DNA from: Lenisia limosa
Lineage: Eukaryota > Protista > Breviatea
DNA length: 64,000 nucleotides
Direction of reading: 5' to 3'
Assembly: GCA_001655205.1 (NCBI GenBank)
Contig: LPNZ01010852.1
Coordinates: 1-64,000 of the forward strand
The notes below the pieces were generated by a model. The model was not told where the DNA came from, did not search any database, and saw only the letters and a list, made by a program, of their open reading frames with translations. The position numbers and the translations under genes were made by a program. Shown piece after piece: positions 9,001 through 23,570 of this stretch (position 1 is the first letter of the stretch; each line of letters opens with the position of its first letter).

Positions 9001-12000
9001 AGGTAAGGCTGGCTTTTCGGAAATGAACTGAGCTGAACTGAACTGAACTGAACTGAGCATTTAGGCTGCGATCAAGGAGCATGTTGATGAGAAGGGCCTT
9101 GTCTACCACGACGAGTGGGTCAGTAAGGTGAGCGACCGCAGCTTATATGTTGGCATTAACCAGTACAGGTGGTCCAGCTTCATGAGACGTCTCTTGTGCG
9201 GCACGGCATCATGGTGCTTGGCCCCTCCGGCTCGGGCAAAACCCAGTGCATCCACAGTCTCATGGCTGCTCTCAACAAAACTGGCCAGCCTCACAAGTGC
9301 GGATAATATTCTCTGACCGCATGTGCTGTTTCAAACCTCACCCCCAGGGACCGCATGTGCTATTTCAAACCTCACCCCCCAGGGAGATTCGCATGAACCC
9401 CAAGGCCATCACTGCTCCCCAAATGTTCGGACGTCTGGATGTTGTCACCAACGTATGCCCGACCTCGCCGTATTGACGTTCAGGACTGGACCGACGGCAT
9501 CTTTAGCTCCATTTGGCGCCGCGCGTGTAAGAAGAAAAGCGAGCAGATTTGGATCACGCTTGACGGGCCTGTTGATGCGATTTGGATTGAAAATCTGAAC
9601 ACTGTCCTAGATGATAACAAAGTAAGCGCTGTTGCCTTGGGTCACACTGTAGTCTCTGACTCTGGCCAATGGTGACCGAATTCCGATGCAAAACACGATG
9701 AAGCTTATCTTCGAAGTTTCAAACCTGGACAACGCGTCTCCTGCCACTGGTTTGCTACCTTGTCACTGGGCTTCCCCACGGTTCCAAAAAACTGAATCTC
9801 TCGATAAATTCTCGATGAATATCGATATTTTATTGGTCATTTTTTGAACCCTAAGGAAGCCCTCCCTACCTGTCATTCAATCTCGATTTCTGCTCAACTT
9901 TAATGGATACTATTATCAGTATGAATATTTCTGATGGTTTTAGTGAGCCGAGCTGGAATGATCTACCTTGCCGTCTCGACGCTGGGCTGGGAGCCTCTGT
10001 ACCAATCTTGGGCAAAAACGCAGAACCGGGGCGTGCAAGGTGGGTCAATGTCTGTGCTTTGTTGACTCTTTAGACGTTCTCACCCCGCTGTTTACCGCCA
10101 ACCTTCCAGTCCTTTTTACTCTTATCAAGGAGAGCCTCAAGCCAACCATGGCTGTATGTTGAGGGTTTTTATGTATTCAGTCAGACCTTCAAGCAGTATT
10201 ATTTCTCAATATTCCTCCGTTCATCATTGTTTGGTCGGTTACCCCTCTCCCCCAGGTGACTGAGATGAACATGGTTACCACAACTACGGACATTCTGACC
10301 TCTCTTATTCCAGAGGTTTGTCAGAATAACGGTGTCTTTTCTTATTAAAAACAAAGCCGCCTTTTTGCTTACCGCACAGGAGGAAGTTCGGTCAATGAGC
10401 GCAGAGCATCTGAGTCGGCTGTTCACATACGCAGTGACATGGGGCATGGGCGGACTGTTTGAGGTCGAAGATAGGATCCTGTTCTCGAAGGAGCTTGCCA
10501 GCCGCCCCGTGAGTCCCTATACTGCCTTGTCTCAGTCGTTCTTGCCCATGGATTCATCGCTGTGCCTGACCTTTTAGGGTATCGACGTTCCCGTGATGAA
10601 TGAAGGAGAAACGCTCTTCGACTTTATGGTGGAAAGCAACGGACAGTGGAAGGCCTGGGCTGATGTGTTAGTGGCGCATGCTTGTTTCTATTGCGTATTC
10701 GCCAACTCTGCCTGACTTCTTAGCGTACCTGAATATGTGTACCCCCAAGACCACTCACCGCTCTTCTCTTCAATCTTCGTGCCCACTGTCGACAACACTC
10801 GCATCGACTACCTTCTCGACCTTCTCATGTCCCGAGTAGGCTCACTAATCGTGACTCTCACCTCTGCAGTCCAAGCCTGTCCTTCTGATCGGCAGTCCTG
10901 GAACTGCCAAAACAGCGACTATGACGCACTACCTGCGGCAACGGCGCTCTGAGAACCTGAGCTACAAACAAATCAACTTCAGCAGTGCCACTACTCCCGG
11001 ACAGGTGCGGTGGAAGACTCTTTCGGGAACATTTGAGCAGTGACATCGTTTACTCTGCTAGGTGCAGCGAATGATTGAAGGAGTCGTCGACAAACGTCTT
11101 GGGAACACCTTCGGCCCTCCTGCTGGTAGGTACCTACGCCCTTTGCTGACTGTCTAGGAAAGCGAATGGCGTTGTTTATTGACGATCTGTCCATGCCTGT
11201 CATCAATGAATGGGGAGACCAGGTTTGCTAGCGCTTTTTGGATGCCCCATTGTCCCATTGTGGATTTGCTTCACGCTCGCAGGTCACCAACGAACTTCTG
11301 CGCCAGCTTATTGACCAAGGCGGCCTCTACTCCCTGGTACGTCCGCCCTTATTCCCCTCTCTCAAGCCGCATGACCCCCTAGGATAAGCCCGGAGAGTTC
11401 TCGCGTATCGTCGATGTTCAGTTCATGGCGGCAATGTCTCACCCCTCCGGCGGCCGCAACGACATTCCCGAAAGACTCAAGGTTGGCCCGGTCTGACTGC
11501 AATTAACTCTGTAGCGCCAATTTGCCATCTTCAACCTGCCGTCACCGTCGTCATCATCGGTGCAACACATCTACAGCAAGATGGTGTCGGGCCACTTCTC
11601 AAGATCCAGAGGCTTCACCGAGGATAGTAGGCTGCTCCTTTGTCGTAACGCTCTAGTCCAAGCCTTGTCACCTAAACTGGTGGACCTCACGCAGAACCTC
11701 TGGTCCGCCACCGCGGCCCGAATGTTACCCACTCCCGCCAAGTTCCACTACGTCTTCACCCTCAGGTTTGAGCCTTGCACCCCATCTTGTTACGGTTTTA
11801 GGGACGTGAGCCGTATTGTTGAGGGCCTGCTCAGGGCCGACAGCTCCGTAATCTCCACCTCAAAGTCGCTGCTGAGCCTTTGGCGCCACGAGAGCCAGCG
11901 CGCAATCAGTGACCGCTTCACATCCAAAGACGAGCACGCCTGGTTCGACAGAGCTACTCAGGTTGGCGGCTGGGGACCTGAGAATCATGATGATTGACCA

Positions 12001-15000
12001 AATTGAAAATGTTGTAGCTCTTAAGACAAAGTTGATGATATAGGAACAACTTCTTACGGTGGCGGACCCCCAAACCGCTGCGGACGTCATGGAGGACCAA
12101 TACTTCGTGGACTTCATGAGAGACCCCGAGGAGGTGCTTTAATATCGTATTTTGGAGTATTGACCCCCCAGATTGAGGATCCGGAAGCTGACATCGAAGA
12201 GGCGCCAAAGATCTACGAAAAGCCCTCGTCCATGGCCAACTTACGCGGCCGTGCTGAGCACTTCATGCAGATGTACACCCAGGAGACTAGGGGCATGAGT
12301 CTGGACCTGGTTCTCTTCAAGGACGCCATTACGCATCTCACGCGCATTTCTCGGGTGTTGCGCACACCTGTTGGCAACGCTCTTCTTGTGAGCTGGGTGG
12401 CCTCTTGGTACCGTTATGCATCAAAGAGTGACGGTGTAGGTTGGTGTCGGAGGAAGCGGACGGCAGTCTTTGACCCGACTTGCTTCGTACATTGCAGGCA
12501 ATGAATGCTTCCAGATCCAGGTGCGTCGGTAGCCCCAGGTTTTATTATATTTTGATCTTCAAATGAACTTGGGTTGTTGGTGCGACGAATGACTCTTTAG
12601 GTCACCCGAACTTACAACGTCAGCAATCTCATAGACGACCTCAAAGTGTGCAGTGAACAGATATCACGGATTTGCTCTATTGGATTAGTCCTTGCGCGCT
12701 TTTTGCTCCAGCCTCATATTTTAGCATTTGTACCGAGTAACTGGTGGAGAGGGGCGACCAGTGACCTTCATCTTAACCGATAACGACATCGTTGACGAGG
12801 CCTTCCTTGAGTACATCAATAGCATCCTTAGGTTTGTCTCTGCCCTGGTGTTGTCATGACTTCAGTTCGGGTGAAGTGCCGAACCTCTTCCCTCGAGATG
12901 AGCTTGACTTGGTACTCTCTGACCTTCGCGCTGTGTTCCTCAAGGATCCCGCAATGAAGGTTCGACTCCATCTGATTCTGCTTTTCTTGTCAGGATACAT
13001 TTTCAATTATTTTCTACCCCCCCCTCTGGAGTGATGGAGTGGTGGGATGCGGTCGGTGCTGCATAAGCGACTGGCCTGAGCTTTGTTTGTTTTTTTGTTA
13101 TCAACCCTCGNNNNNNNNNNNNNNNNNNNNNNNNNNNNNNNNNNNNNNNNNNNNNNNNNNNNNNNNNNNNNNNNNNNNNCAGGGAGAAATCGATACGCAG
13201 GAGGAGCTCTACTCGTACTTCATACAGCGCGCCCGCGCCAATCTCCACGTAGTGTTGTGCATGAGCCCTGTTGGTGAGACGCTCCGCTCTCGCTCTCTCC
13301 GCTTCCCGGGTCTCATTTCTGGCTGCACCATTGATTGGTTCTTCGGATGGCCTCGTGAAGCCCTCGTGGAAGTGGCTGCAAAGCACATCAAAAACTTCCC
13401 CATGCTCTGCAGCGGCGAGGACAGAGACGCGCTCGTCGACCACATGGCCTTCCTGCACAGCCACGTCAAGGCGCAGTGTGACAATTACTTCCAAAAATAC
13501 CGCAGATCGACTTACGTCACCCCCAAGTCCTATCTCTCCTTCATCAATCAGGTATTCCTTCCACCTTTCTTTCCTTCTCATCCCTTCAGTACATGAGGTT
13601 CTACGACTTGAAGAAGAACCATTACGATGACCTTGCCTCCCGAATGAACCAAGGTCTTGAGAAGCTGCTGGAGGCCGGAGAAAGCGTGTCTCGTCTGAGA
13701 CTCGAACTTGTTGACAAGGTGGCCGGACTTTCTGACGTCACGTAGAATGCTTGATGGTTGGGAATGACGATTTAGGAACGCAACTTAGAGGTGGCACAAG
13801 CGAAGGCTCAGGAGTTCCTCGTCGTCATCACTGCTAAAACAGCCGAGGCTGAAAAGAAAAAGAACGAGGTAGGCTCCACTTATATATATTTTGGAATATT
13901 TCATTTGAACTATGTGCACTGACCCTTCAAACTCAAAAATATGACACTTTGTACTCACCCCCCCCCCCTAGGTTCTTGTGGTCAAAGAAGAAATGGCAGA
14001 TGTTGTGGCCAAGATCGAATGTGACAAGAAGGTGGTGGAAGACGATCTTCTTGAGGCCAAACCGGCCCTGGACAGTGCCATTGAGGCGCTCGACCGCATC
14101 AAGCCCGCTGATATCAGGTAACGGGGATAGGGAGTGATATCAAGTAATGGGGATGGGGAGGAGTGATGTCAGGTAACGGGGATAGGGAATGTTTGCTTGC
14201 ATGCATGTCTGAACTGACCCCTTTTCAGTAACGTGAAGAAGCTGCGTAAGCCGCCCAACCTCATCCAGAGAATCCTTGACGGTGTTCTTTTGCTCAAACA
14301 GCAGCCTGTTCTCCCCATCCAGGTTTGTCATGATGGCTTGCTTCTCACCCTATAGCCCGACCCCGAAAAGCCCGGGTATTTCCTGGCGTCGTGGGCCAAT
14401 GCTGTTCGTACCATGGGTGCCGGCGACTTCCTACCCTCGCTTCTCAACTTCCCCAAGGACCAGGTATGCCTGTTGCTATTGTTTCAATAGTGTTTTCAAT
14501 TTCTAACTCGATGCAGATTACGGACGAGACCATTGAGCTGCTGCAGCCCTACCTTGAAATGCCAGACTTCAACTCCAAGGACGCCGAGAAATCCTCGGGT
14601 TCCATCGCTGGTCTCTGCAGCTGGGTTCAAGCTATGGTGGGGGCGTGTGCAGTATGTAATGAATGATCAGCATTTTTGTTGAGATGTTAACGATCTAGGT
14701 GATCTATCGCCGTGTTTCCAAGGAGGTCCTTCCCAAAAAGGAAGCTTTAGTTCGGGCCGAGAGGAAACTGCAGTTAGCACAGGCCGACTTGCAGACCACC
14801 CAGGTTTGTTTTTATTTTCAGTGTATTGATATTGCGCTCCTGATGTTGTACTGATCCTCCTCAGGAGGAACTCGATGGAAAGCAGAAGGTTCTAGATGAG
14901 ATGAAGGCCGAATATGAAGAGGCCCTGAGACACAAACAAGCCCTCCAGGTATGGAGGTTTTTCTGGTTCAGATGTTTGATTCTCATGATACAGACTTATT

Positions 15001-18000
15001 CTTCCCTTGACCACCCCAGGATGATGCTGAGCTGACGGCTCGGAAGGCAGAAAGCGCCACGTCTCTCATTTCTGGGCTCTCCGGAGAGAAGGAAAGATGG
15101 ACGCAGCAATCTCGTGAGACATGGTGTAGAGAATTTAACATGTGGTTCGTTGTTGTCCGCCTTACCACCCCCTCACAGGAGAATTTGCGGAATCAACGCG
15201 TCGTTTAGTTGGAGATGTTGCTCTTGCTTCAGCCTTCCTTTCCTATTGCGGACCCTTCAACCAAGAGTTCAGGGCCAGCCTCTTCAAGTCTTTCACCAGA
15301 GTATGCTGAGATTGACCCATCATCATAATAATGATGTTTCGCCAACAGAGTTGATCTGAGGCTTTTTGTTTTCCTGTCACCTCCCTAGGACTTGAAGCAA
15401 CACAACATTCCGTGCAGCCAAACCCTGGACGTCACCAAGCTCCTTGCTGATGAAGCAACTATAGGCGAATGGCATCTCCAGGTACATATAAACATAATGT
15501 TATACAATACGCATTTTGGTGTAATTCACACTTAAAAAGACATATTTTGCGACAAGTTATAAGGAAAAACTTTTTGCCATCAGTGTAACTCACTGTATAC
15601 CTTACGTTCCTGATGATGCCTCTAACCCTTCAATGGCATTTGACGCATTAGGGTCTGCCCACTGACGAGCTGTCCATCCAAAATGGCGTCGTTGTCACAA
15701 ATTCGTCCCGCTACCCCTTGCTGGTCGACCCCCAGGGACAGGCCAGAGCCTGGCTCACGTCTCGAGAGGTCGGCTTACCTTTCCCCGATCCCTCACCATC
15801 TAGGCTAAGAACAACTTGCGCATCACTAGCTTCTCGGATAAGTTCTTCCGTCAAACGCTGGAGGATTGTCTGTCGTTCGGCTACCCCATTCTTATTGAGG
15901 GCATTGTGGAGTCCCTGGACCCGGTCCTTGATAACGTCCTTGAGAAAGTTTTCATCAAAACTGGAAGGTTGGTCCTGTTGCTTGTTGACATCTTGATCGA
16001 TTTGTTCACATTATTTAGGACCCGGAAGGTGCGAGTTGGAGATAAGGAAATCGACTTTGACGATAATTTCTTCCTGTACATGACAACGAATTTGGCCAAC
16101 CCCTCTTTCTCGCCCGAGGTATGCATCACACTTGTTTTCCTTTTAACTGCCTAGGTGTTTGCAAAGACCTCTGTTGTGGACTTCACGGTGACTATGAAGG
16201 GACTGGAGGACCAGCTTCTTGGTGAGCCGTTTTGACCCATCTCACAGCTCAGGACGTGTAATCCTGAAGGAGAAGATCGAGCTTGAACAACAGCGCCAAC
16301 AACTGCTTGAGGACGTAGGTTTAATTACATTTTTATATTCACTTGCAATCTCCATATTACTAGCAATCAAGATTGTCCGTAGCAGATTTATCCATTAAAT
16401 AGTAGTGAACGGTGTTCGTGAACTGACTCTGCAGGTGAACCAAAACAAGAGACGAATGAAGGAGCTTGAAGACTCTCTGCTGCTTCGGCTGACCACCACC
16501 GAAGGCTCGCTTGTCGACGATGTTGAGTTGATCGGAGTCCTCAATAGCTCCAAGACCACAGCCAATGAGGTTCTGGAGAAACTCACAAACAGCCAGGATA
16601 CAGAGACCAAAATCAACATTGCACGAGAGGAGTTCAGACCTGTCGCCACGCGCGGCTCTATTCTCTACTTCCTTATCGGTAGGCTGCCCTCCTAAGCGGT
16701 GGTGTGGGCCTAATACTATCCCCTTTCCCCATATGAGAACCTGACGTTGCAGTCGAAGTTGGCCTTGTCAACCACATGTACGCTACAAGTTTGGCGCAGT
16801 TCCTCAAGACGTTCGATCTCGTGGGAGGGATTAGATTGCTTTTGATTAGTATTGGCCCGTTCTAACCACCCAGGCCATCGATAGAGCCCCACGGTCGCCG
16901 CTGCCGGTCAAGAGACTACGCAATATTGTCGACAGTGTCACCGCCGCCGTAGGTCTTATTTTTGTTCATGGGGTCAACTTAATGCTGGCGGATTGATTTT
17001 GACTCCGCAAGGTGCATACCAACGTTGTTCGAGGCCTTTATGAGAAGGACAAGTTCCTATTCAGTCTGCAGCTCGCGCTCAAGGTCAGTGAGGGCCTTAG
17101 AACTAGGGCTTCACATCCGTTCAAAAATACTGGTAAAATATATCGATAGTTTTCGAGGGTTTATCGAGAAATTCAGTCTTTTTTCGAACCGAAGTGAAGC
17201 CCTACTTAGGACAGACTCTTGAGACGATTCTTTGACGTTTTAGGTTGACCTCAAGGCCGGCAACATCTCCTTCCAGGAGTACCGTTATCTCATCAGAGTA
17301 CGTTCCGATACTCCCCCCCCCCCCCCNNNNNNNNNNNNNNNNNNNNNNNNNNNNNNNNNNNNNNNNNNNNNNNNNNNNNNNNNNNNNNNNNNNNNNNNNN
17401 NNNNNNNNNNNNNNNNNNNNNNNNNNNNNNNNNNNNNNNNGAAGCCTTGCCACTGGATCACTGACTCGTCTTGGCTCAATCTTGTCGCCCTCAGGTATGT
17501 CTTTGTGTCTCTTGTCATGGCTAAATTACTCTTTCTGTGTCTCTTGCAATGGCTAAATCACTCTTTCTGTGTCTCTTGCAATGGCTAGATTACTCTTTTT
17601 ACTGCAATGACCTGCTACACTTGTTGTACATCCCTAACCTGCAGTGATTTGCCACAATTTAGCGAAGTGCTTGACCACCTGGTTGCCAACAGCGCCAAAT
17701 GGCAGCAATGGTGCGCGCGCGGGGGGTATTAGCAATTGACACACCACCGCAACTGACCATCAGGTACGAACTTGAGGCACCAGAGAAGGCAATCCTCCCC
17801 GACCGCGGAATGGAGGGACTTGATTCGTTCCGTCGGCTCCTTGTGCTCCGAGCCTGGTGTGAGGACCGCGTCATATTCGCCGCCACCGACTACATCTCCG
17901 NNNNNNNNNNNNNNNNNNNNNNNNNNNNNNNNNNNNNNNNNNNNNNNNNNNNNNNNNNNNNNNNNNNNNNNNNNNNNNNNNNNNNNNNNNNNNNNNNNNN

Positions 18001-21000
18001 TCCAAGCTTGGTGAGCGGTACATCAACGCCGTGCCTGTGGACTTGGACAAGATCAGTCATGAGGCCGAACCGGTCACTCCGATCGTGGGGGGAGGGGTAG
18101 TTGTCATCAAAGTCCGCCACGATGCCTAACTCACTAGGTTTGCCTCCTGAGCCAGGGTAGTGATCCGTCCAGCTCAATATCATCTCTTGCAAAGAGACGC
18201 AAGGTTCGCTTATCGTGAAATAGTGTTATGGCATTGCTCCTGTGATTATCTCAGATTACGCTGGGCGAGATCTCCATGGGCCAAGGACAGGAGCCCCATG
18301 CACGTCGTCTCGTCACCCAGGCAATGGCACAAGGCCACTGGGTGCTTCTGCAGAACGGCCATCTCGGCCTCCCCTTCCTCAATGAGCTCATGGAACTCCT
18401 CAAATCTACACAAGTCTGTACAGCCGTCCCTATTCCAGCCGTTCTCAAACCGTTCTGACTCCTTAGGACATTGACAGCAACTTCAGAGTGTGGGTGACTA
18501 CGGACCCCATTGACGTGTTCCCAATTGCTCTCCTACAAACATCCATCAAGGTTTGCCACCACCAGGACCGGACCGGAGCTGATTCTTTCAGGTCACTTCC
18601 GAGCCGCCTCTTGGACTCAAGGCCGGCCTCTCCAGAACCTACCAATGGGTCACCCAGGTATGGACTACTCTCTAGTGGAAATGTTGACGCTCTTAGGAAC
18701 TTCTCGATGCTGTTGACAAAACACAGTGGCAACCAATCCTCTACGTGTATGCCCTGTCATCCTCTTGTCTTAATCCACTCCCTTTTTAAGAATTTTTTTT
18801 TAAAATCTAGCCTCCCCAGTCGCAAAATTCTTAAAGAAACCATCCTTCCACCAACTTTTATCGAAGTTGCTTTGACCCCCCCTTTATTTCACGCCCCAGA
18901 CTCTGCTTCCTCCACTCAGTGGTGCAGGAAAGAAGAAAGTTTGGAGCCCTGGGTTGGAACATCCCCTATGAGTTCAACCTCAGTGACTTACAGGTCGGGC
19001 ATTACCGGCTTTCATTGGATTGGCCGTATTCAGGATAGAGCTTGTTTGATTCCTTAGGCTGGAGTGTTGTTCCTGCAGAACTTCATCTACGACTGGGACC
19101 ACCGCCGGCCGATTTCATGGTCAACCATCCAGTACATGCTTGCCGAGGTATGTGATCAATCATGGCCCTCTGCTTGTCTGACTTTTCAGGTTGTCTACGG
19201 TGGCAGAGTCACTGACGATTTCGATAGAATACTGATGAACACCTTTACTGAGGTATGCACGTCTTTACCAGTTCAATCCCTAAACCACCAGGTCTGGCTT
19301 GGCGACCAGATTCTGCAGCCGAATTTCAAATTCAGTGGCAGCTACGGCATCCCCCAACTCTCGACGATTGATGAGTACCGCAAAGAGGTGGCACAACTGC
19401 CCCTTGTCGACAGCCCTGAGGTGAGCGATCTTTGATCTTGTCATATCTGACACCCCAGGTCTTTGGTCTGCATCCCAATGCTGACATCACGTACCGGACC
19501 AACCAAGGCCGTGCTGTCCTTGATACCATTCTCAGCGTCCAGCCCAAGGTAAGGCTTTCTCTTGACTATCACGCATGCAATACCACACCCGTTAGCAACG
19601 AAAGTATGATACAAGGATAAGGAAAACGCCTCCGGGTGATGGTAATGCTGCAGGAAAACATTGGTTCTGGAGAGACTCGTGAGGACACAGTGCTGAAGAT
19701 TGTCAACGACCTTCTCGGCAAAATGCCAGCTAACTTCGAACCAGCCAAGGTGGGCAATATCATTCCTTGCGTTTCTTCCTTGAATGGTATCTGACAACAC
19801 AGGTGGTGAAGGCTATCCAACGACTTGGTGGGATGGCTGTCCCCCTCAATGTGTTCCTCAAGCAGGAGGTCACGACTATGGCTAAGGTGCGTGCCTATTT
19901 GACATTGTGGAGCAAACGGGAAATGCATTCATTGTCTAGGTGCTGACCCTTGTGCGTAAGACCCTTGAGGACCTGCAGCTCGCAATCGCTGGTACCATCA
20001 TCATGAATGCCGAACTTCAGGTATGGTGTTACTTTGTTGCCCTTCTTCTTCTTCGTGTTGTTTCGCCTAACTCTTCAGTCCGCCCTCAACTCACTCTATG
20101 ACGCAATGGTACCCGAATCTTGGTCCAAAGTGGGGACCAACAAATCGACCGCTTTGTGTTCTTTCATTTCTGATCTCTCAGATCTCATGGCCTTCTCCCA
20201 CCCTTGGGTTCTGGATGAACGATCTCGATCAGAGATGCAGCCAATACAGTACCTGGCTCTATGACGGAATCCCGAAGGTGTTCCTCTTCTCTGCTTTCTT
20301 CAACCCCCAGGTTCGCATTCCTCTGTTAACTTTTATTTCTGTTTGACATCAAGTTGATTCTTAAACTCACAATGCAGGGCTTCTTGACGTCCATGAAACA
20401 GGAGGTGACCAGACAGCGTGGATGGGCCTTGGACGCCGCCGTACTTCATGGCGAGGTTAGGATTCTCTGACTGAATAAAGCCTGGACCAACTATTTGCTT
20501 CATAATGAGTAGACTCGGGCAATTAATATTAATCAAATATTAATATGATTTGACTGAATTTTTTTTCAATATTTCTGATCAATGAAATATCAGCAACTGT
20601 GATGCATTGCACGCTTTGACCAGTAGGTTCTACGCGTGGACAAAGAAGGCATTGACAGGCCAGCAGACGAGGGAGTCTACCTGCAAGGCCTGTGGCTCGA
20701 GGGCGCGGGATGGGACAAACGTCACGGCCGTCTTACTGAGGCTAGTGCTAAGGTTTGTGTCTTACGTTCTTGTCAATCTCATCCTCACACAGGTTCTTCA
20801 CACCAAAATGCCTGTTATTCATGTGACATGTGTTACTTCCAGTCACCCCACCCAACAAGGACTTCAAGTAGGTCGCTCTTTCACAATGATATGTTTTCAA
20901 CAACTATTCCATTGAGCATGCTACTTTGAAGACGCTAAACTCTTACTATTGCAGAAGTCATACAGCTGCCCCGTGTATACCACTCCCCAAAGGACAGATC

Positions 21001-21158
21001 TGAACCACATTTTCAACATCTCCCTTCCAACCAATGTGGTATGTTGAAGAGCTTTTAATTTTGAGAAGACAGGTGTACAGTATGTCATTTACTGACCTTT
21101 TCAGACCCCAGACAGATGGATTCTCCGTGGTGTTGCTCTCGTGTCGTCCAAGCAATAA
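1..21158 (+). CDS. DNAH5: Axonemal dynein heavy chain, outer-arm gamma type (DNAH5/DNAH8-like); multi-exon, 5' end lies outside the window
   Basis: Exon peptides match DHC motifs: [22 protein letters not shown]; FNCSDQMDF...[12 protein letters not shown]; [17 protein letters not shown]; P2 GPSGSGKT (~9221); [24 protein letters not shown]; P3 [10 protein letters not shown] (~10886); P4 [11 protein letters not shown] (~12440). [34 protein letters not shown] is DNAH5/8-like. Also [15 protein letters not shown] and C-terminal [13 protein letters not shown] (stop 21156-21158). The P1 Walker A falls in the gap at 7776-7882. Confidence 0.93.
2542..2635. mobile_element. MITE family A, copy 1 (intronic)
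   Basis: TAGGGCTTCCCTT...AAGGAAACCCTA termini; internal AATATCGATA..ATCGAGGATTTATC core shared with the other copies; TA at both ends. Confidence 0.75.
6885..6986. mobile_element. MITE family A, copy 2 (intronic, termini eroded)
   Basis: TAGAGCTTTACTTCGGTTCGAAAA...TTTTCGAACCGAAGTGAAGTCCAA inverted repeat plus the shared core. Confidence 0.8.
8789..8888. mobile_element. MITE family A, copy 3 (intronic)
   Basis: TAGGGCTTCACTTCGGTTCGAAAAAG...CTTTTTTCCAACCGAAGTGAAGCCCTA; ~25-bp TIR, TA flanks. Confidence 0.88.
9024..9058. repeat. (TGAAC)7 pentanucleotide microsatellite in a dynein intron
   Basis: tgaac tgagc tgaac tgaac tgaac tgaac tgagc read directly. Confidence 0.85.
9767..9864. mobile_element. 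MITE family A, copy 4 (intronic, opposite orientation)
   Basis: GGGCTTCC...GGTTCCAAAAAACTGA...TTTTTTGAACC..GGAAGCCCT; the core is the reverse complement of that in copies 1-3. Confidence 0.75.
14109..14189 (+). repeat. Threefold tandem duplication of an exon end plus 5' splice site
   Basis: tgatatcag|gtaacggggataggga, tgatatcaagtaatggggatgggga, tgatgtcaggtaacggggataggga. Confidence 0.85.
17104..17204. mobile_element. MITE family A, copy 5 (intronic)
   Basis: TAGGGCTTCACATCCGTTCAAAAA...TTTTTTCGAACCGAAGTGAAGCCCTA with the shared core. Confidence 0.85.
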
Positions 21159-21218
21159 ATATCTTTATCAATATAGTCTATTTCATGTAACTTAATATTG
21201 CCTTCATAAGGCGTATTG

Positions 21219-21252
21219 CTGGCAAGATGTCTCGCAAGCATCTCGCTAAGAA
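21219..21252 (+). repeat. 34-bp exact inverted copy of histone H3 coding sequence (22045-22078)
   Basis: ctggcaagatgtctcgcaagcatctcgctaagaa equals the sense strand of H3 codons around [10 protein letters not shown]. Confidence 0.9.
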
Positions 21253-21603
21253 TCAGGTTTTTCAAGGGTGGAATTAAAAAGACAGTGAAATATGAAATTT
21301 AATAAAAAATAAAAATGCAATAGGAAATCGATTGAATCACAAAAAGAGTTTAAAATTCAAATGTGCCCAGTTGTTTCTAGAAGCTTTTTAATGAAATACT
21401 ATTTGAGTAAGAGCAAGAAGTTAGAGAGGAATTGATGACAGATTGCGTATTAGAAAAAAAAAAAAAAATAATAAGAGGAGATCGAGATCTAATGAAATGA
21501 GGAATAAGAAGTATAAAAGAATTATTTTAAATATGGACTATTGTATCTGTAGAAGTAGTGATAAAGTTAAGAAAACAATAAAAGAGAAGATTATAAGGAG
21601 TCA

Positions 21604-21710
21604 GTTTTTGGGAAATTGAAGGTTGGTGTTAAAAAACACCGTTGTGGTAAAAGGAAACACAAAAATGTGAATCCGAAAAAGAGCCAAAAAGGCAGAAGTC
21701 AAAAGACTTA
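21604..21710 (-). repeat. H3 3'UTR, left arm of an inverted repeat with the H4 3'UTR
   Basis: Reverse complement aligns to 22651-22756 with 3 substitutions and 1 indel, starting exactly at the TAA stop. Confidence 0.93.
21625..21640 (-). promoter_or_regulatory. Histone-type 3' stem-loop candidate (GGTGTT-TTTT-AACACC) downstream of H3
   Basis: Perfect 6-bp stem and 4-nt U loop, with CCACAAC 5' flank and AACC 3' flank; same geometry as the SLBP-bound histone hairpin. Confidence 0.6.
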
Positions 21711-22115
21711 GGCGTGGGTGCCGCGGAGACGCATGGCAAGACGCATATCGTCAGGCTTGATGGTAACGCGATGGGCATGGATGGCGCAAGCGTTGGTGTC
21801 ATCGAAAAGACCGACAAGGTAAGCCTCAGCAGCCTCCTGGAGAGCAGTGACGGCGGTAGACTGGAAACGGAGGTCGTCCTTGATGGTGGAGGCGATCTCA
21901 CGAACAAGACGCTGGAAGGGAAGCTTGCGAATGAGGAGCTCGGTGGTACGCTGGTAGCGACGGATATCACGCAGAGCGACGGTACCGGGGCGGAAACGGT
22001 GAACCTTCTTGACGGCACCGGAGGGAACGGTCTTCTTGGCGGACTTCTTAGCGAGATGCTTGCGAGACATCTTGCCAGAGGCGGACTTGCGGGCAGTCAT
22101 CTTAGTACGAACCAT
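21708..22115 (-). CDS. H3: Histone H3, divergent, intronless (135 aa)
   Basis: [11 protein letters not shown]...[37 protein letters not shown]...[39 protein letters not shown]. Confidence 0.97.
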
Positions 22116-22149
22116 TTTGAATTATTCAATGAGAAAAGTAAAGAGAATT

Positions 22150-22301
22150 AAAAAAAAAATTATTTAAATAGAAAACAGTTTTTGAAAATTACAAGATAAA
22201 ATTTCTAACTATCATCCCGCCAAAATTTTGGCGCCATGATAATTAGATATTTTATCTTGTAATTTTCAAAAACTGTTTTCTATTTAAATAATTTTTTTTT
22301 T
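22150..22301. promoter_or_regulatory. Palindromic bidirectional H3/H4 promoter (two 76-bp arms)
   Basis: Arms are reverse complements with ~4 mismatches; centre at 22225/22226, which is 110 bp from the H3 ATG and 113 bp from the H4 ATG. Confidence 0.85.
22216..22235. promoter_or_regulatory. Two back-to-back E2F-type motifs (CCCGCCAAAA|TTTTGGCGCC)
   Basis: TTTGGCGC on + matches the E2F consensus TTTSSCGC, and TTTGGCGG on - is a close variant; they sit at the exact palindrome centre. Confidence 0.55.
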
Positions 22302-22338
22302 GAGGAATGTATCTATCTTTTTTGATTAATTGATTAAC

Positions 22339-22653
22339 ATGTCTGGACGTGGAAAGGGAGGCAAGGGACTCGGAAAGGGTGGCGCCAAGCGTCTTACTCG
22401 CAAGGTTCTCCGCGACAACATCCAGGGTATCACTAAGCCCGCTATCCGCCGTCTCGCTCGTCGTGGTGGTGTCAAGCGTATCAACTCCCTCATCTACCCC
22501 GAGACTCAGAAGGTTCTCCGCCTCTTCCTCGAAGGTATCCTCAAGGACGCCATCACTTACACCGGCCATGCCCGCCGCAAGACCGTCACCGCCATGGACG
22601 TCGTCTACGCTCTCAAACGCGCCGGCCGCAACATCTACGGTGTTGCCAACTAA
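22339..22653 (+). CDS. H4: Histone H4, divergent, intronless (104 aa)
   Basis: [48 protein letters not shown]...[15 protein letters not shown]; true ATG at 22339. Confidence 0.98.
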
Positions 22654-22756
22654 GTCTTTTGACTTCTGCCTTTCGGCTCTTTTTCGGATTCACATTTATG
22701 TGTTTCCTTTAACCACAACGGTGTTTTTTAACACCAACCTTCAATTTCCCAAAAAC
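22651..22756 (+). repeat. H4 3'UTR, right arm of the inverted repeat with the H3 3'UTR
   Basis: ~96% identical to the reverse complement of 21604-21710; a further AAAACTGACTC match at 22766-22776 vs 21598-21608. Confidence 0.93.
22720..22735 (+). promoter_or_regulatory. Histone-type 3' stem-loop candidate (GGTGTT-TTTT-AACACC) downstream of H4
   Basis: Identical hairpin to the one after H3, ~67 nt past the stop. Confidence 0.6.
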
Positions 22757-22879
22757 AACCAATGTAAAACTGACTCTTCTTTTGGTATACTTTGGCGCCT
22801 TTTTGTCTTTTTATTTTCTGACTTTTCATTCCTTCCTTTCTCTTCTGTCCTGATATAATTATTGTAATTACTTCTACAA

Positions 22880-23570
22880 CAGGTTGATCAGCCAGATTTT
22901 CACCTCGGAGTTTTGGTATAAACATCCAGAACCTGCTGCTAGTACAAAAGTACCCGCTGGCTCGGAATTCCATCCCCAGATCCCACAGTCCGAGCCGGCG
23001 GTCACTTTTCAATTTGAAAAATACAACACCAATCCTTTTGGAACTTCTCAATATCAGCTCAATATCAAGTGTATTATATAGATAGAATGACGTAGACAAG
23101 TTCTTTAGCTTAAACGCCTAAGGTTCCAGAGTTTTCTTAGATTGAATCGTGGTAATGAAGCTTAATAAAGTCTGTAATGAATGTAAGCGAAGAAAGAAGA
23201 AGTGCAGGTGAGCTAATAGGATCAAAATACGTTTTATCAAGGTTTGACACATCACTGTTATTTTGTGACGTTCCTTGTGACTAACCTTCCAGTGGACCGC
23301 CTGTTTGCGAGCTTTGTCTGTCAAAGTCATTAGGTTAGTGGAGATTTTACTTTCCGACCTTTGTGCTCTGATATATAAATAATATGATACCCACTTCCCT
23401 CTCTTGTAGCTCCTTGTCTTCTTTTACATTCTATAGACTGCAGATTTGATCCACCGAAGCGTCCAGGCCCGAAAGTGAAAGTAGCCTGTCGTGGCGATGG
23501 ATTGAAGGGGGACAGATCAGACTTCCTGAATGCAATTGTGTTGGTTGGGCGACACAATCCAAGGCTTTAA
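22880..23570 (+). other. Possible exon fragments of an unidentified gene
   Basis: Open, moderately GC-rich stretches (IFTSEFWYKHPEP..., DCRFDPPKRPGPKVKV...) inside AT-rich DNA; no recognisable family and no confident gene model. Confidence 0.2.

What the first reader, a model, noticed from the sequence alone, without database searches (positions are those of the whole stretch)
21598..22776. Quasi-palindromic H3-H4 cassette: mirror-image regulatory DNA around two non-homologous coding sequences
Seen: nearly all of the ~1.18-kb locus outside the two ORFs and ~35-bp leaders is an inverted repeat. The promoter is a 76+76-bp palindrome (~4 mismatches), with the ATGs 110 and 113 bp from the axis. 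The 3'UTRs are ~96% identical starting exactly at the TAA stops. Established: divergent H3-H4 pairs are common, but their UTRs are normally unrelated. Inference: the identity must be maintained or recently created, either by intramolecular gene conversion across the foldback or by a palindromic duplication with CDS swap. That would enforce 1:1 H3:H4 output through identical promoter and 3' processing signals. Alternatively the IR-bounded unit is a mobile or amplifiable histone cassette. This is the best candidate for an undescribed system in the window.
Basis: partly seen in the sequence, partly recalled or inferred. Interest (0 to 1): 0.85.

Follow-up and report, generated by a model that had tools for sequence, protein, structure and literature searches.

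The report
Mirror-image histone H3-H4 gene pair
A protist's back-to-back histone H3 and H4 genes carry nearly identical promoter halves and tails, which looks like an ordinary S-phase histone pair whose control sequences are kept alike by copying between copies, not a new or mobile system.

Summary
H3 (21708-22115, minus) and H4 (22339-22653, plus) diverge from a 223-bp spacer. Its core is a 76+76-nt palindrome (72/76), and the 3'UTRs match at 104/108 positions from the stop codon.

The parts are recognisable. The axis is two abutting E2F-type sites, and each arm holds a conserved 29-nt box and a TATA box. Each 3'UTR holds a sub-threshold but well-placed histone stem-loop (Rfam RF00032).

The cassette is not unique. 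Contigs of the only public DNA run show the 3'UTR element in at least six flanking contexts, plus a second H3-H4 version that differs only at synonymous sites. An independent assembly of this locus has the same layout but arms only about 75-79% alike.

Site patterns suggest recent arm-to-arm gene conversion in the window's copy. Assembly smoothing could give the same pattern. The 95% version rests on the window assembly alone.

I found no target-site duplication, no transposase and no sign of a coding-sequence swap.

The scan noted the same architecture before on other pieces of this genome: a second H3-H4 spacer and an H2A-H2B pair. Those notes are unchecked.

Verdict: an ordinary replication-dependent histone pair with unusually homogenised regulatory modules. 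Moderate interest.

The parts
21708..22115 (-). Histone H3 coding sequence, 135 aa, no intron, TAA stop. Divergent H3, about 74% identical to canonical H3.
   Evidence: ORF. Homologues and Pfam PF00125. The only closer protein is its own copy, P0022.
22339..22653 (+). Histone H4 coding sequence, 104 aa, no intron, TAA stop.
   Evidence: ORF (ATG at 22339). The exact product is found on an independent contig next to H3.
22150..22301 (.). 152-bp promoter palindrome, axis between 22225 and 22226. The arms match at 72/76 and are identical from 24 to 76 nt from the axis.
   Evidence: Four-arm comparison with L001.
22216..22235 (.). Two abutting E2F-type sites, CCCGCCAAAA|TTTTGGCGCC. Each reads TTTTGGCG(G/C) towards its own gene.
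   Evidence: Sequence. The octamer TTTGGCGC occurs 7 times in the window against 1.75 expected. The match to the E2F consensus TTTSSCGC is from my own knowledge. Binding was not tested.
22180..22208 (-). H3-side copy of a 29-nt conserved promoter box between the E2F site and the TATA box.
   Evidence: Found only at these two sites in 64 kb. Its 22-nt core is identical in all four arms of the window and L001 versions. The L001 H4-side arm has one change in the full box.
22243..22271 (+). H4-side copy of the 29-nt conserved promoter box (1 mismatch).
22162..22170 (-). TATA-like box TATTTAAAT for H3, followed by a T run.
   Evidence: Sequence. Conserved in all four arms. Calling it a TATA box is inference.
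22281..22289 (+). TATA-like box TATTTAAAT for H4, followed by a T run.
   Evidence: Sequence.
22116..22149 (-). H3-specific leader (around the start site and the 5'UTR). Unlike the H4 leader, but 32/36 alike between the two cassette versions.
22302..22338 (+). H4-specific leader, 33/34 alike between the two cassette versions.
21598..21707 (-). H3 3'UTR module, 96% identical to the H4 module. Four small hairpins are predicted.
   Evidence: z = -4.8.
22654..22776 (+). H4 3'UTR module. It includes a 14-nt insertion at 22757-22770.
   Evidence: z = -4.5.
21625..21640 (-). Histone-type stem-loop GGUGUU-UUUU-AACACC after H3.
   Evidence: Rfam RF00032: 26.6 bits (gathering score 34), E 6e-5, over 21599-21645. 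Fold.
22720..22735 (+). Histone-type stem-loop GGUGUU-UUUU-AACACC after H4, 66 nt after the stop codon.
   Evidence: Rfam RF00032: 23.9 bits, E 4e-5 to 6e-4, with the alignment shown. Fold.
21219..21252 (+). Isolated 34-nt exact copy of H3 tail-coding sequence, inverted relative to the gene. It may not belong to the cassette.
   Evidence: Present in L001 too. The run's contigs break there.

Best explanation
This is one of at least two divergently transcribed, intron-less H3-H4 pairs. It is probably replication-dependent.

Each gene is built from the same two regulatory modules.
- Promoter module: an E2F-type site, a 29-nt box, a TATA box and a T run.
- 3' module: about 110 nt ending in a histone-type stem-loop.

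Two promoter modules placed head to head form the palindrome. Their E2F sites abut at the axis. One S-phase factor complex could then fire both genes, with each TATA box about 55 nt from the axis setting direction (inferred).

Because the genes diverge, the DNA inverted repeat at the 3' ends gives both mRNAs the same sense sequence. Both would be cut after the same stem-loop and handled alike (inferred).

The high identity is kept up by two things. One is purifying selection on the motifs. The other is gene conversion confined to the homologous non-coding flanks, both between the two arms of this locus and among histone loci. The coding sequences are free to drift at synonymous sites.

Shown: the anatomy, the sub-threshold stem-loop matches, the multi-copy 3' element, the second cassette version, and the site patterns.

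For: Anatomy and repeats.

Stem-loops:
- Both UTRs match RF00032 on the right strand, 66 nt after the stop codon.
- They have a 6-bp stem and a UUUU loop.

The 3' element is not private to this cassette:
- Its summed contig depth is 300-444, against 36-41 for the flanks.
- Loose ends give at least six different flanking contexts.

A second cassette version exists:
- Two H4 coding-sequence variants lie at 41.8 and 35.7 depth, each near flank depth. They differ only at third codon positions.
- L001 differs from the window at 27 bases and 5 gaps, all between 21662 and 22305. Its H3 protein is identical.
- An RNA contig carrying the variant 3'UTR continues into a different downstream flank.

Conversion signature:
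- The window's arms match at 72/76, while the same-gene arms of the two versions match at only 65/77-79.
- Differences unique to one arm number 13 on the L001 arms and 1 on the window arms.
- Gene-specific sites survive only within 17 nt of the axis and in the leaders.

Expression: depth in the poly(A) RNA library is low (4.4, against 18-91 for neighbours). This fits mostly non-polyadenylated mRNAs (weak).

Literature:
- Head-to-head histone pairs with 200-300-nt shared promoters are the norm (PMC13525598).
- Histone cis-regulation is more alike within a species than within a histone family (PMC1794435).
- Histone stem-loops are widespread in protists (bioRxiv 10.64898/2026.10.14.759114).
Against: - The stem-loop scores lie below Rfam's gathering score. 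No purine-rich downstream element follows; the next 19 nt are C/U/A-rich.
- I could not read the other copies of the 3' element, so their link to histone genes rests on unchecked scan notes. The tool also warns that summed contig depth is not a copy number.
- The window's nearly perfect arms are absent from the run's contigs. The singleton asymmetry could therefore come from assembly or polishing rather than biology.
- E2F, its partner DP, SLBP and U7 genes were not looked for; they are outside the window.
- No transcription start or 3'-end mapping exists.
Confidence: 0.68

Rival explanations
1. The extreme symmetry is partly an assembly or polishing artefact. The locus really is a divergent H3-H4 pair with similar flanks. 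Short-read graph collapse, or consensus polishing across the two arms and the paralogous cassette, then made the window's outer promoter arms identical.
For: - L001 has identical flanks but promoter arms only 79% alike.
- No contig of the run covers 22134-22295 at 95% likeness or better.
- Only 18% of the promoter's sampled words are held by that run.
- The surviving mismatches lie within 23 nt of the axis, where graph collapse cannot act.
Against: - At positions 47, 55, 65 and 66 the window arms carry states found on neither L001 arm. The window's arm sequence therefore exists somewhere in the reads.
- The four inner arms are all different and pair up as two loci.
- L001 is itself a visible mosaic. 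It switches between versions inside stretches shared by both, and the run's contigs mix the variants in a third way.
- Contigs drop variants, so absence is weak evidence.
Confidence: 0.22
2. Selection alone explains it. Every conserved base in the arms and the UTRs is functional (factor sites, processing signals), and identity is held by purifying selection without gene conversion.
For: - The 29-nt box, the E2F sites, the TATA box and the stem-loop are conserved in all arms and versions.
- All four H3/H4 UTR differences fall in loops or unpaired positions of the predicted hairpins.
Against: - The same outer-arm positions differ freely in the second version: 12-14 differences per arm.
- One other copy of the 3' element is clearly diverged just after the stem-loop (loose end at 21625).
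- The T/A variant at 21662 is shared across genes and versions, which looks like exchange.
- The loop-only placement of the four differences has a chance probability of about 0.15 by my own arithmetic.
Confidence: 0.07
3. The unit is a mobile or amplifiable cassette bounded by inverted repeats, or the product of a palindromic duplication followed by replacement of one coding sequence.
For: - The unit has inverted repeats at its ends.
- At least two cassette copies exist in the genome.
Against: - There is no direct repeat at the two outer ends.
- There is no transposase-like ORF in or beside the unit.
- The terminal repeats are the functional 3'UTRs.
- A likely second H4 copy keeps similarity beyond the repeat end (AACCAATGTAAA), so the duplicated segment is not bounded by the repeats (from a 30-nt loose end only).
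- The leaders and coding sequences show no residual homology.
Confidence: 0.03

Closest known systems
Head-to-head H3-H4 (and H2A-H2B) histone gene pairs with a shared bidirectional promoter, as in yeasts, Drosophila, C. elegans, Volvox and Chlamydomonas
   Same: - Divergent orientation and a 223-bp spacer, within the usual 200-300 nt (PMC13525598).
- Intron-less genes with central shared regulatory sites.
- By my own recollection, the Volvox pairs also have short spacers with TATA boxes and 3' palindromes. That paper was not held.
   Different: - Here the spacer is a near-perfect 152-bp palindrome rather than a set of shared short motifs.
- The two 3'UTRs are 96% identical over about 108 nt from the stop codon.
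Replication-dependent histone mRNA 3' stem-loop (Rfam RF00032), bound by SLBP, with cleavage directed by the U7 snRNP
   Same: - 6-bp stem starting GG and a 4-nt U-rich loop.
- A-rich 5' flank and an ACC 3' flank.
- Position shortly after the stop codon of both histone genes.
   Different: - Stem positions 3-6 differ from the consensus, with paired changes.
- The scores (26.6 and 23.9 bits) lie below the gathering score of 34.
- No purine-rich downstream element follows.
- The shared module is about four times longer than the 26-nt metazoan element.
Promoters with paired inverted E2F sites (adenovirus E2, DHFR, E2F1), and E2F activation of a human H2A gene
   Same: - Two E2F-consensus sites in inverted orientation sit at the centre of an S-phase-type promoter.
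- E2F control of a replication-dependent histone gene is on record (Oswald 1996, cited in PMC1794435).
- The viral and DHFR examples are from my own knowledge.
   Different: - The sites abut at their T-rich ends and serve two genes.
- Binding is untested, and the organism's E2F/DP genes were not examined.
Arm-to-arm gene conversion in genomic palindromes (human Y-chromosome palindromes, plastid inverted repeats) and concerted evolution of histone arrays
   Same: - The arms are more alike within the locus than between paralogous loci, and singleton differences have been erased.
- Concerted evolution of histone repeats by gene conversion is established (PMC13525598).
   Different: - The tracts here are tiny (about 50-110 nt).
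- They are non-coding only, and they flank two non-homologous genes.
- The review finds evidence for concerted evolution lacking for dispersed histone pairs.

Membership tests
Histone 3' UTR stem-loop (Rfam RF00032) | Scores at or above the family's gathering score (34 bits) | tested here: not met
   26.6 and 23.9 bits. No hit at the gathering threshold.
Histone 3' UTR stem-loop (Rfam RF00032) | 6-bp stem beginning GG, a 4-nt U-rich loop, an A-rich 5' flank and an AC-rich 3' flank | tested here: met
   ACAAC-GGUGUU-UUUU-AACACC-AACC aligned to the model end to end. Predicted as a hairpin in both UTRs.
Histone 3' UTR stem-loop (Rfam RF00032) | Lies shortly downstream of the stop codon of a core histone gene, on the sense strand | tested here: met
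   66-67 nt after the TAA of both H3 and H4.
Histone 3' UTR stem-loop (Rfam RF00032) | Purine-rich histone downstream element, with the partner machinery (SLBP, U7 snRNA, LSM10/11) encoded in the genome | tested here: inconclusive
   The downstream sequence CCUUCAAUUUCCCAAAAAC is not purine-rich. No U7 hit in the window.
Bidirectional (head-to-head) histone gene pair | Partner histones (H3 with H4) transcribed divergently from a short shared spacer | tested here: met
   H3 on the minus strand, H4 on the plus strand, 223 nt between the ATGs. The same pairing is on an independent contig.
E2F-regulated promoter | Match to the E2F consensus TTTSSCGC near the start site | tested here: met
   TTTTGGCGCC and TTTTGGCGGG at the axis. 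Conserved in both cassette versions.
E2F-regulated promoter | E2F/DP proteins are present and bind the sites, and expression is tied to S phase | not testable with these tools
   No access to the rest of the genome and no cell-cycle expression data.
Transposable element bounded by inverted repeats | Target-site duplication flanking the terminal inverted repeats | tested here: not met
   The sequences outside 21598 and 22776 share no direct repeat.
Transposable element bounded by inverted repeats | Encodes a transposase, or copies end exactly at the repeat tips | tested here: not met
   The unit holds only H3 and H4 as recognisable genes. The other ORFs listed there overlap them in other frames. 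A likely second copy shares flank beyond the tip (weak).

The most novel reading that the evidence does not exclude
This genome may run a flank-only concerted evolution of its core histone genes. In this reading, promoter and 3' processing modules of about 80-110 nt are continually copied among H3, H4, H2A and H2B genes. The coding sequences share no homology. Copying across the inverted arms of each pair (foldback or cruciform-assisted conversion) would be the main route. The result would be hard-wired equal transcription and processing of partner histones. That would be concerted evolution of regulatory DNA uncoupled from the genes it serves, in dispersed histone pairs, where current reviews find evidence for concerted evolution lacking.
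Probability: 0.2. Interest if true: 0.6.

Novelty: new variant of a known kind. Interest (0 to 1): 0.4.

Why it matters
If the symmetry holds up, this compact locus separates selection from gene conversion in regulatory DNA unusually cleanly.
- Two unrelated coding sequences sit between interchangeable control modules.
- A second cassette serves as an internal control.

It also gives a minimal natural design for equal two-gene expression, and a non-animal case of E2F-type sites and a stem-loop on histone genes.

It does not point to a new kind of genetic system.

Tried and rejected
- **Rfam at gathering thresholds:** nothing in the window. The microRNA-family hits on the palindrome in the E-value scan only reflect a long hairpin.
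- **Exact-product look-up for H3:** not on record, because the gene caller used a later start codon.
- **Metagenome scan with the stem-loop core:** no match.
- **Metagenome scan with the H3 protein:** one 55% relative on a 2-kb contig, with no intact H3 ORF, no H4 and no inverted repeat. Uninformative.
- **By-sequence look-up in the scan's notes:** blank.
- **Other histone loci of this genome:** I could not fetch them. The second H3-H4 copy and the H2A-H2B pairs are known here only through contig depth, loose ends and unchecked notes.
- **Downstream gene (22.8-28 kb):** the ORFs gave nothing recognisable by eye.
- **Volvox H3-H4 paper:** not held.
- **Organism:** I suspected a breviate from the run labels and from scan notes on integrins and macroH2A. 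I did not establish this and do not claim it.
- **Coding-sequence swap and mobile-cassette readings:** rejected for the reasons given under the rival explanations.

Full report
**What is there**

The stretch holds two intron-less histone genes back to back.
- H3 lies at 21708-22115 on the minus strand (135 aa).
- H4 lies at 22339-22653 on the plus strand (104 aa).
- H3 is a divergent member of its family. It is about 74% identical to canonical H3, and nothing closer exists among 5.8 billion proteins except its own copy.

The 223-nt spacer contains a palindrome, 22150-22225 against 22226-22301.
- It is 76+76 nt, matches at 72/76, and has no gap between the arms.
- The ATGs lie 110 and 113 nt from the axis.

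The 3'UTRs are inverted copies.
- They match at 104 of 108 columns, starting one base before the TAA.
- Six further bases match after a 14-nt insertion on the H4 side.

None of it can be chance.

**What the parts are**

The axis reads CCCGCCAAAA|TTTTGGCGCC. That is two sites matching the E2F consensus TTTSSCGC (my own knowledge of the consensus), each pointing towards its own gene.

Moving outwards, each arm has three further features:
- a 29-nt box, whose 22-nt core is identical in every arm I could compare (one L001 arm has a single change in the full box);
- a TATA-like TATTTAAAT about 55 nt from the axis;
- a T run.

Identity stops about where transcription should start. The 34- and 37-nt leaders are gene-specific.

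Each 3'UTR is predicted to form four small hairpins (z about -4.5 to -4.8). The last is GGUGUU-UUUU-AACACC. It aligns end to end with Rfam's histone 3' stem-loop model at 26.6 and 23.9 bits. That is below the gathering score of 34, but the E-values are 6e-5 and 6e-4, and the strand and position are right.

Because the genes diverge, the DNA inverted repeat gives both mRNAs the same sense sequence, not complementary ones.

**The cassette is not unique**

I laid the contigs of the one public DNA run that holds this sequence onto 21000-23400.

The 3'UTR element:
- Its summed depth is 300-444, against 36-41 in the flanks.
- Its loose ends lead into at least six different flanking sequences, upstream and downstream.
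- The tool warns that summed depth is not a copy number, so I claim only 'several copies'.

The H4 coding sequence:
- It appears as two variants at 41.8 and 35.7 depth, each close to flank depth.
- The variants differ at five sites, all third codon positions.
- This fits two loci better than two alleles.

An RNA contig from a poly(A) library carries the variant H3 3'UTR and then runs into a downstream flank unlike the window's. That again points to a second locus.

An independent metagenome assembly of this same locus (L001) gives further detail.
- It is 100% identical to the window over more than 20 kb of flanks.
- It differs at 27 bases and 5 gaps, all between 21662 and 22305, which covers the H3 3'UTR, the H3 coding sequence and the promoter.
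- Its H3 protein is unchanged.
- The switches fall inside stretches shared by both versions, so L001 is most simply a mosaic of the two cassettes.

Notes from this scan on other pieces of the genome report the same design elsewhere:
- a second dyad-symmetric H3-H4 spacer with a double E2F-like centre (s1-201438);
- a mirror-image histone promoter with central E2F-like sites (s1-205296);
- H2A-H2B pairs sharing a 74-80-nt 3'UTR element with a variant stem-loop (s1-205135, s1-205189, s1-201350).

These are unchecked notes by other readers. They agree with the depth and loose-end evidence but do not add independent proof.

**Conversion or artefact**

I compared four promoter arms: window H3 side, window H4 side, L001 H3 side and L001 H4 side.
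- The window's arms match each other at 72/76. Each matches its same-gene counterpart in L001 at only 65/77-79.
- The L001 arms match each other at 60/80 in this alignment (79% in the repeat search).
- Differences unique to one arm number 13 on the L001 arms and 1 on the window arms.
- Sites that separate the H3 side from the H4 side in both versions survive only at 9, 10 and 17 nt from the axis, and again beyond 77 nt in the leaders.

This is what a recent conversion tract over the outer arm of the window's locus would leave. It is also what graph collapse or consensus polishing of an inverted repeat would leave.

Evidence against a pure artefact:
- The window arms carry states at four positions that neither L001 arm has.
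- All four inner arms are distinct and pair up as two loci.

Evidence against certainty:
- No contig of the run covers 22134-22295.
- Only 18% of the promoter's sampled words are in that run's contigs.

I put roughly 70% on the symmetry being real.

**3'UTR: selection or exchange**

- The 3'UTRs differ by about 2-4% in every comparison I could make, both between genes and between versions. Synonymous sites of the two cassette versions differ at 14 positions in 717 nt of coding sequence, all silent.
- The T/A difference at 21662 is shared across genes and versions.
- One other copy of the element is clearly diverged just after the stem-loop (loose end at 21625). The post-stem-loop segment is therefore not strictly constrained, yet it is identical between this H3 and H4.

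Together these favour exchange plus selection over selection alone.

**Not mobile, no coding-sequence swap**

- No direct repeat flanks the unit.
- Nothing in or beside it looks like a transposase.
- The 'terminal repeats' are the working 3'UTRs.
- The leaders and coding sequences show no residual similarity.

**How it most likely works**

One E2F-type complex at the axis switches both genes on at S phase. Each TATA box sets direction. Both mRNAs end at the same stem-loop module and are handled alike, which would help equal output of partner histones.

All of this paragraph is inference from anatomy. The low depth of histone RNA in the poly(A) library (4.4, against 18-91 for neighbours) is weakly consistent with non-polyadenylated messages.

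**Against the literature**

- Head-to-head histone pairs with 200-300-nt shared promoters are standard. That review finds evidence for concerted evolution in tandem arrays and finds it lacking for dispersed pairs (PMC13525598).
- Histone cis-regulation is known to be more alike within a species than within a histone family (PMC1794435).
- Histone stem-loops occur downstream of histone genes in 214 of 310 surveyed protists (bioRxiv 10.64898/2026.10.14.759114).
- I found no description of a histone pair with a near-perfect palindromic spacer plus 3'UTRs that are near-identical from the stop codon. The older Volvox and Chlamydomonas papers are not in the library.

**Verdict**

This is a real, functionally ordinary histone pair with an unusual degree of flank homogenisation. 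I class it as a new variant of a known kind, with interest about 0.4. The decisive test is a long read or a cloned PCR product across the locus, together with an alignment of all histone loci of the genome.

Noticed in passing
window 21219-21252 (+) versus 22045-22078: A 34-nt exact copy of H3 tail-coding sequence sits between the dynein heavy-chain stop and the H3 3' end, inverted relative to the gene. It is present in both assemblies, and the run's contigs break at it. An H3 transcript reading through its stem-loop would carry it as a perfect antisense to its own 5' coding region.
   Followed up: partly
window 22791-22798: A further E2F-type octamer, TTTGGCGC(C), lies 15 nt beyond the H4-side repeat end. 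It is upstream of the next plus-strand gene, whose RNA contig starts at 23046 and has a GT..AG intron at 23205-23289.
   Followed up: no
window 9512-17699: Five of the seven TTTGGCGC octamers in the window (1.75 expected) fall inside the dynein heavy-chain gene region. Their meaning is unknown.
   Followed up: no
L001 9372-9960 versus window 21662-22305: The public metagenome assembly of this locus is a mosaic. Its flanks are those of this locus, while the H3 3'UTR, the H3 coding sequence and the promoter apparently come from a paralogous H3-H4 cassette. The run's own contigs mix the variants in yet another way. Histone loci in short-read assemblies of this organism should not be trusted base by base.
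   Followed up: partly
whole window: No ORF of 200 aa or more exists anywhere in the 64 kb, although large genes such as dynein heavy chain are present. This fits a very intron-dense genome. The two histone genes stand out as intron-less and GC-rich at third codon positions.
   Followed up: no
window 22654-22719 and 21641-21707: Upstream of the histone stem-loop, each 3'UTR has three more small predicted hairpins, each with a U-rich loop of 4-5 nt. The first starts right at the stop codon. All four H3/H4 differences fall in loops or unpaired bases. This is not significant on its own.
   Followed up: partly
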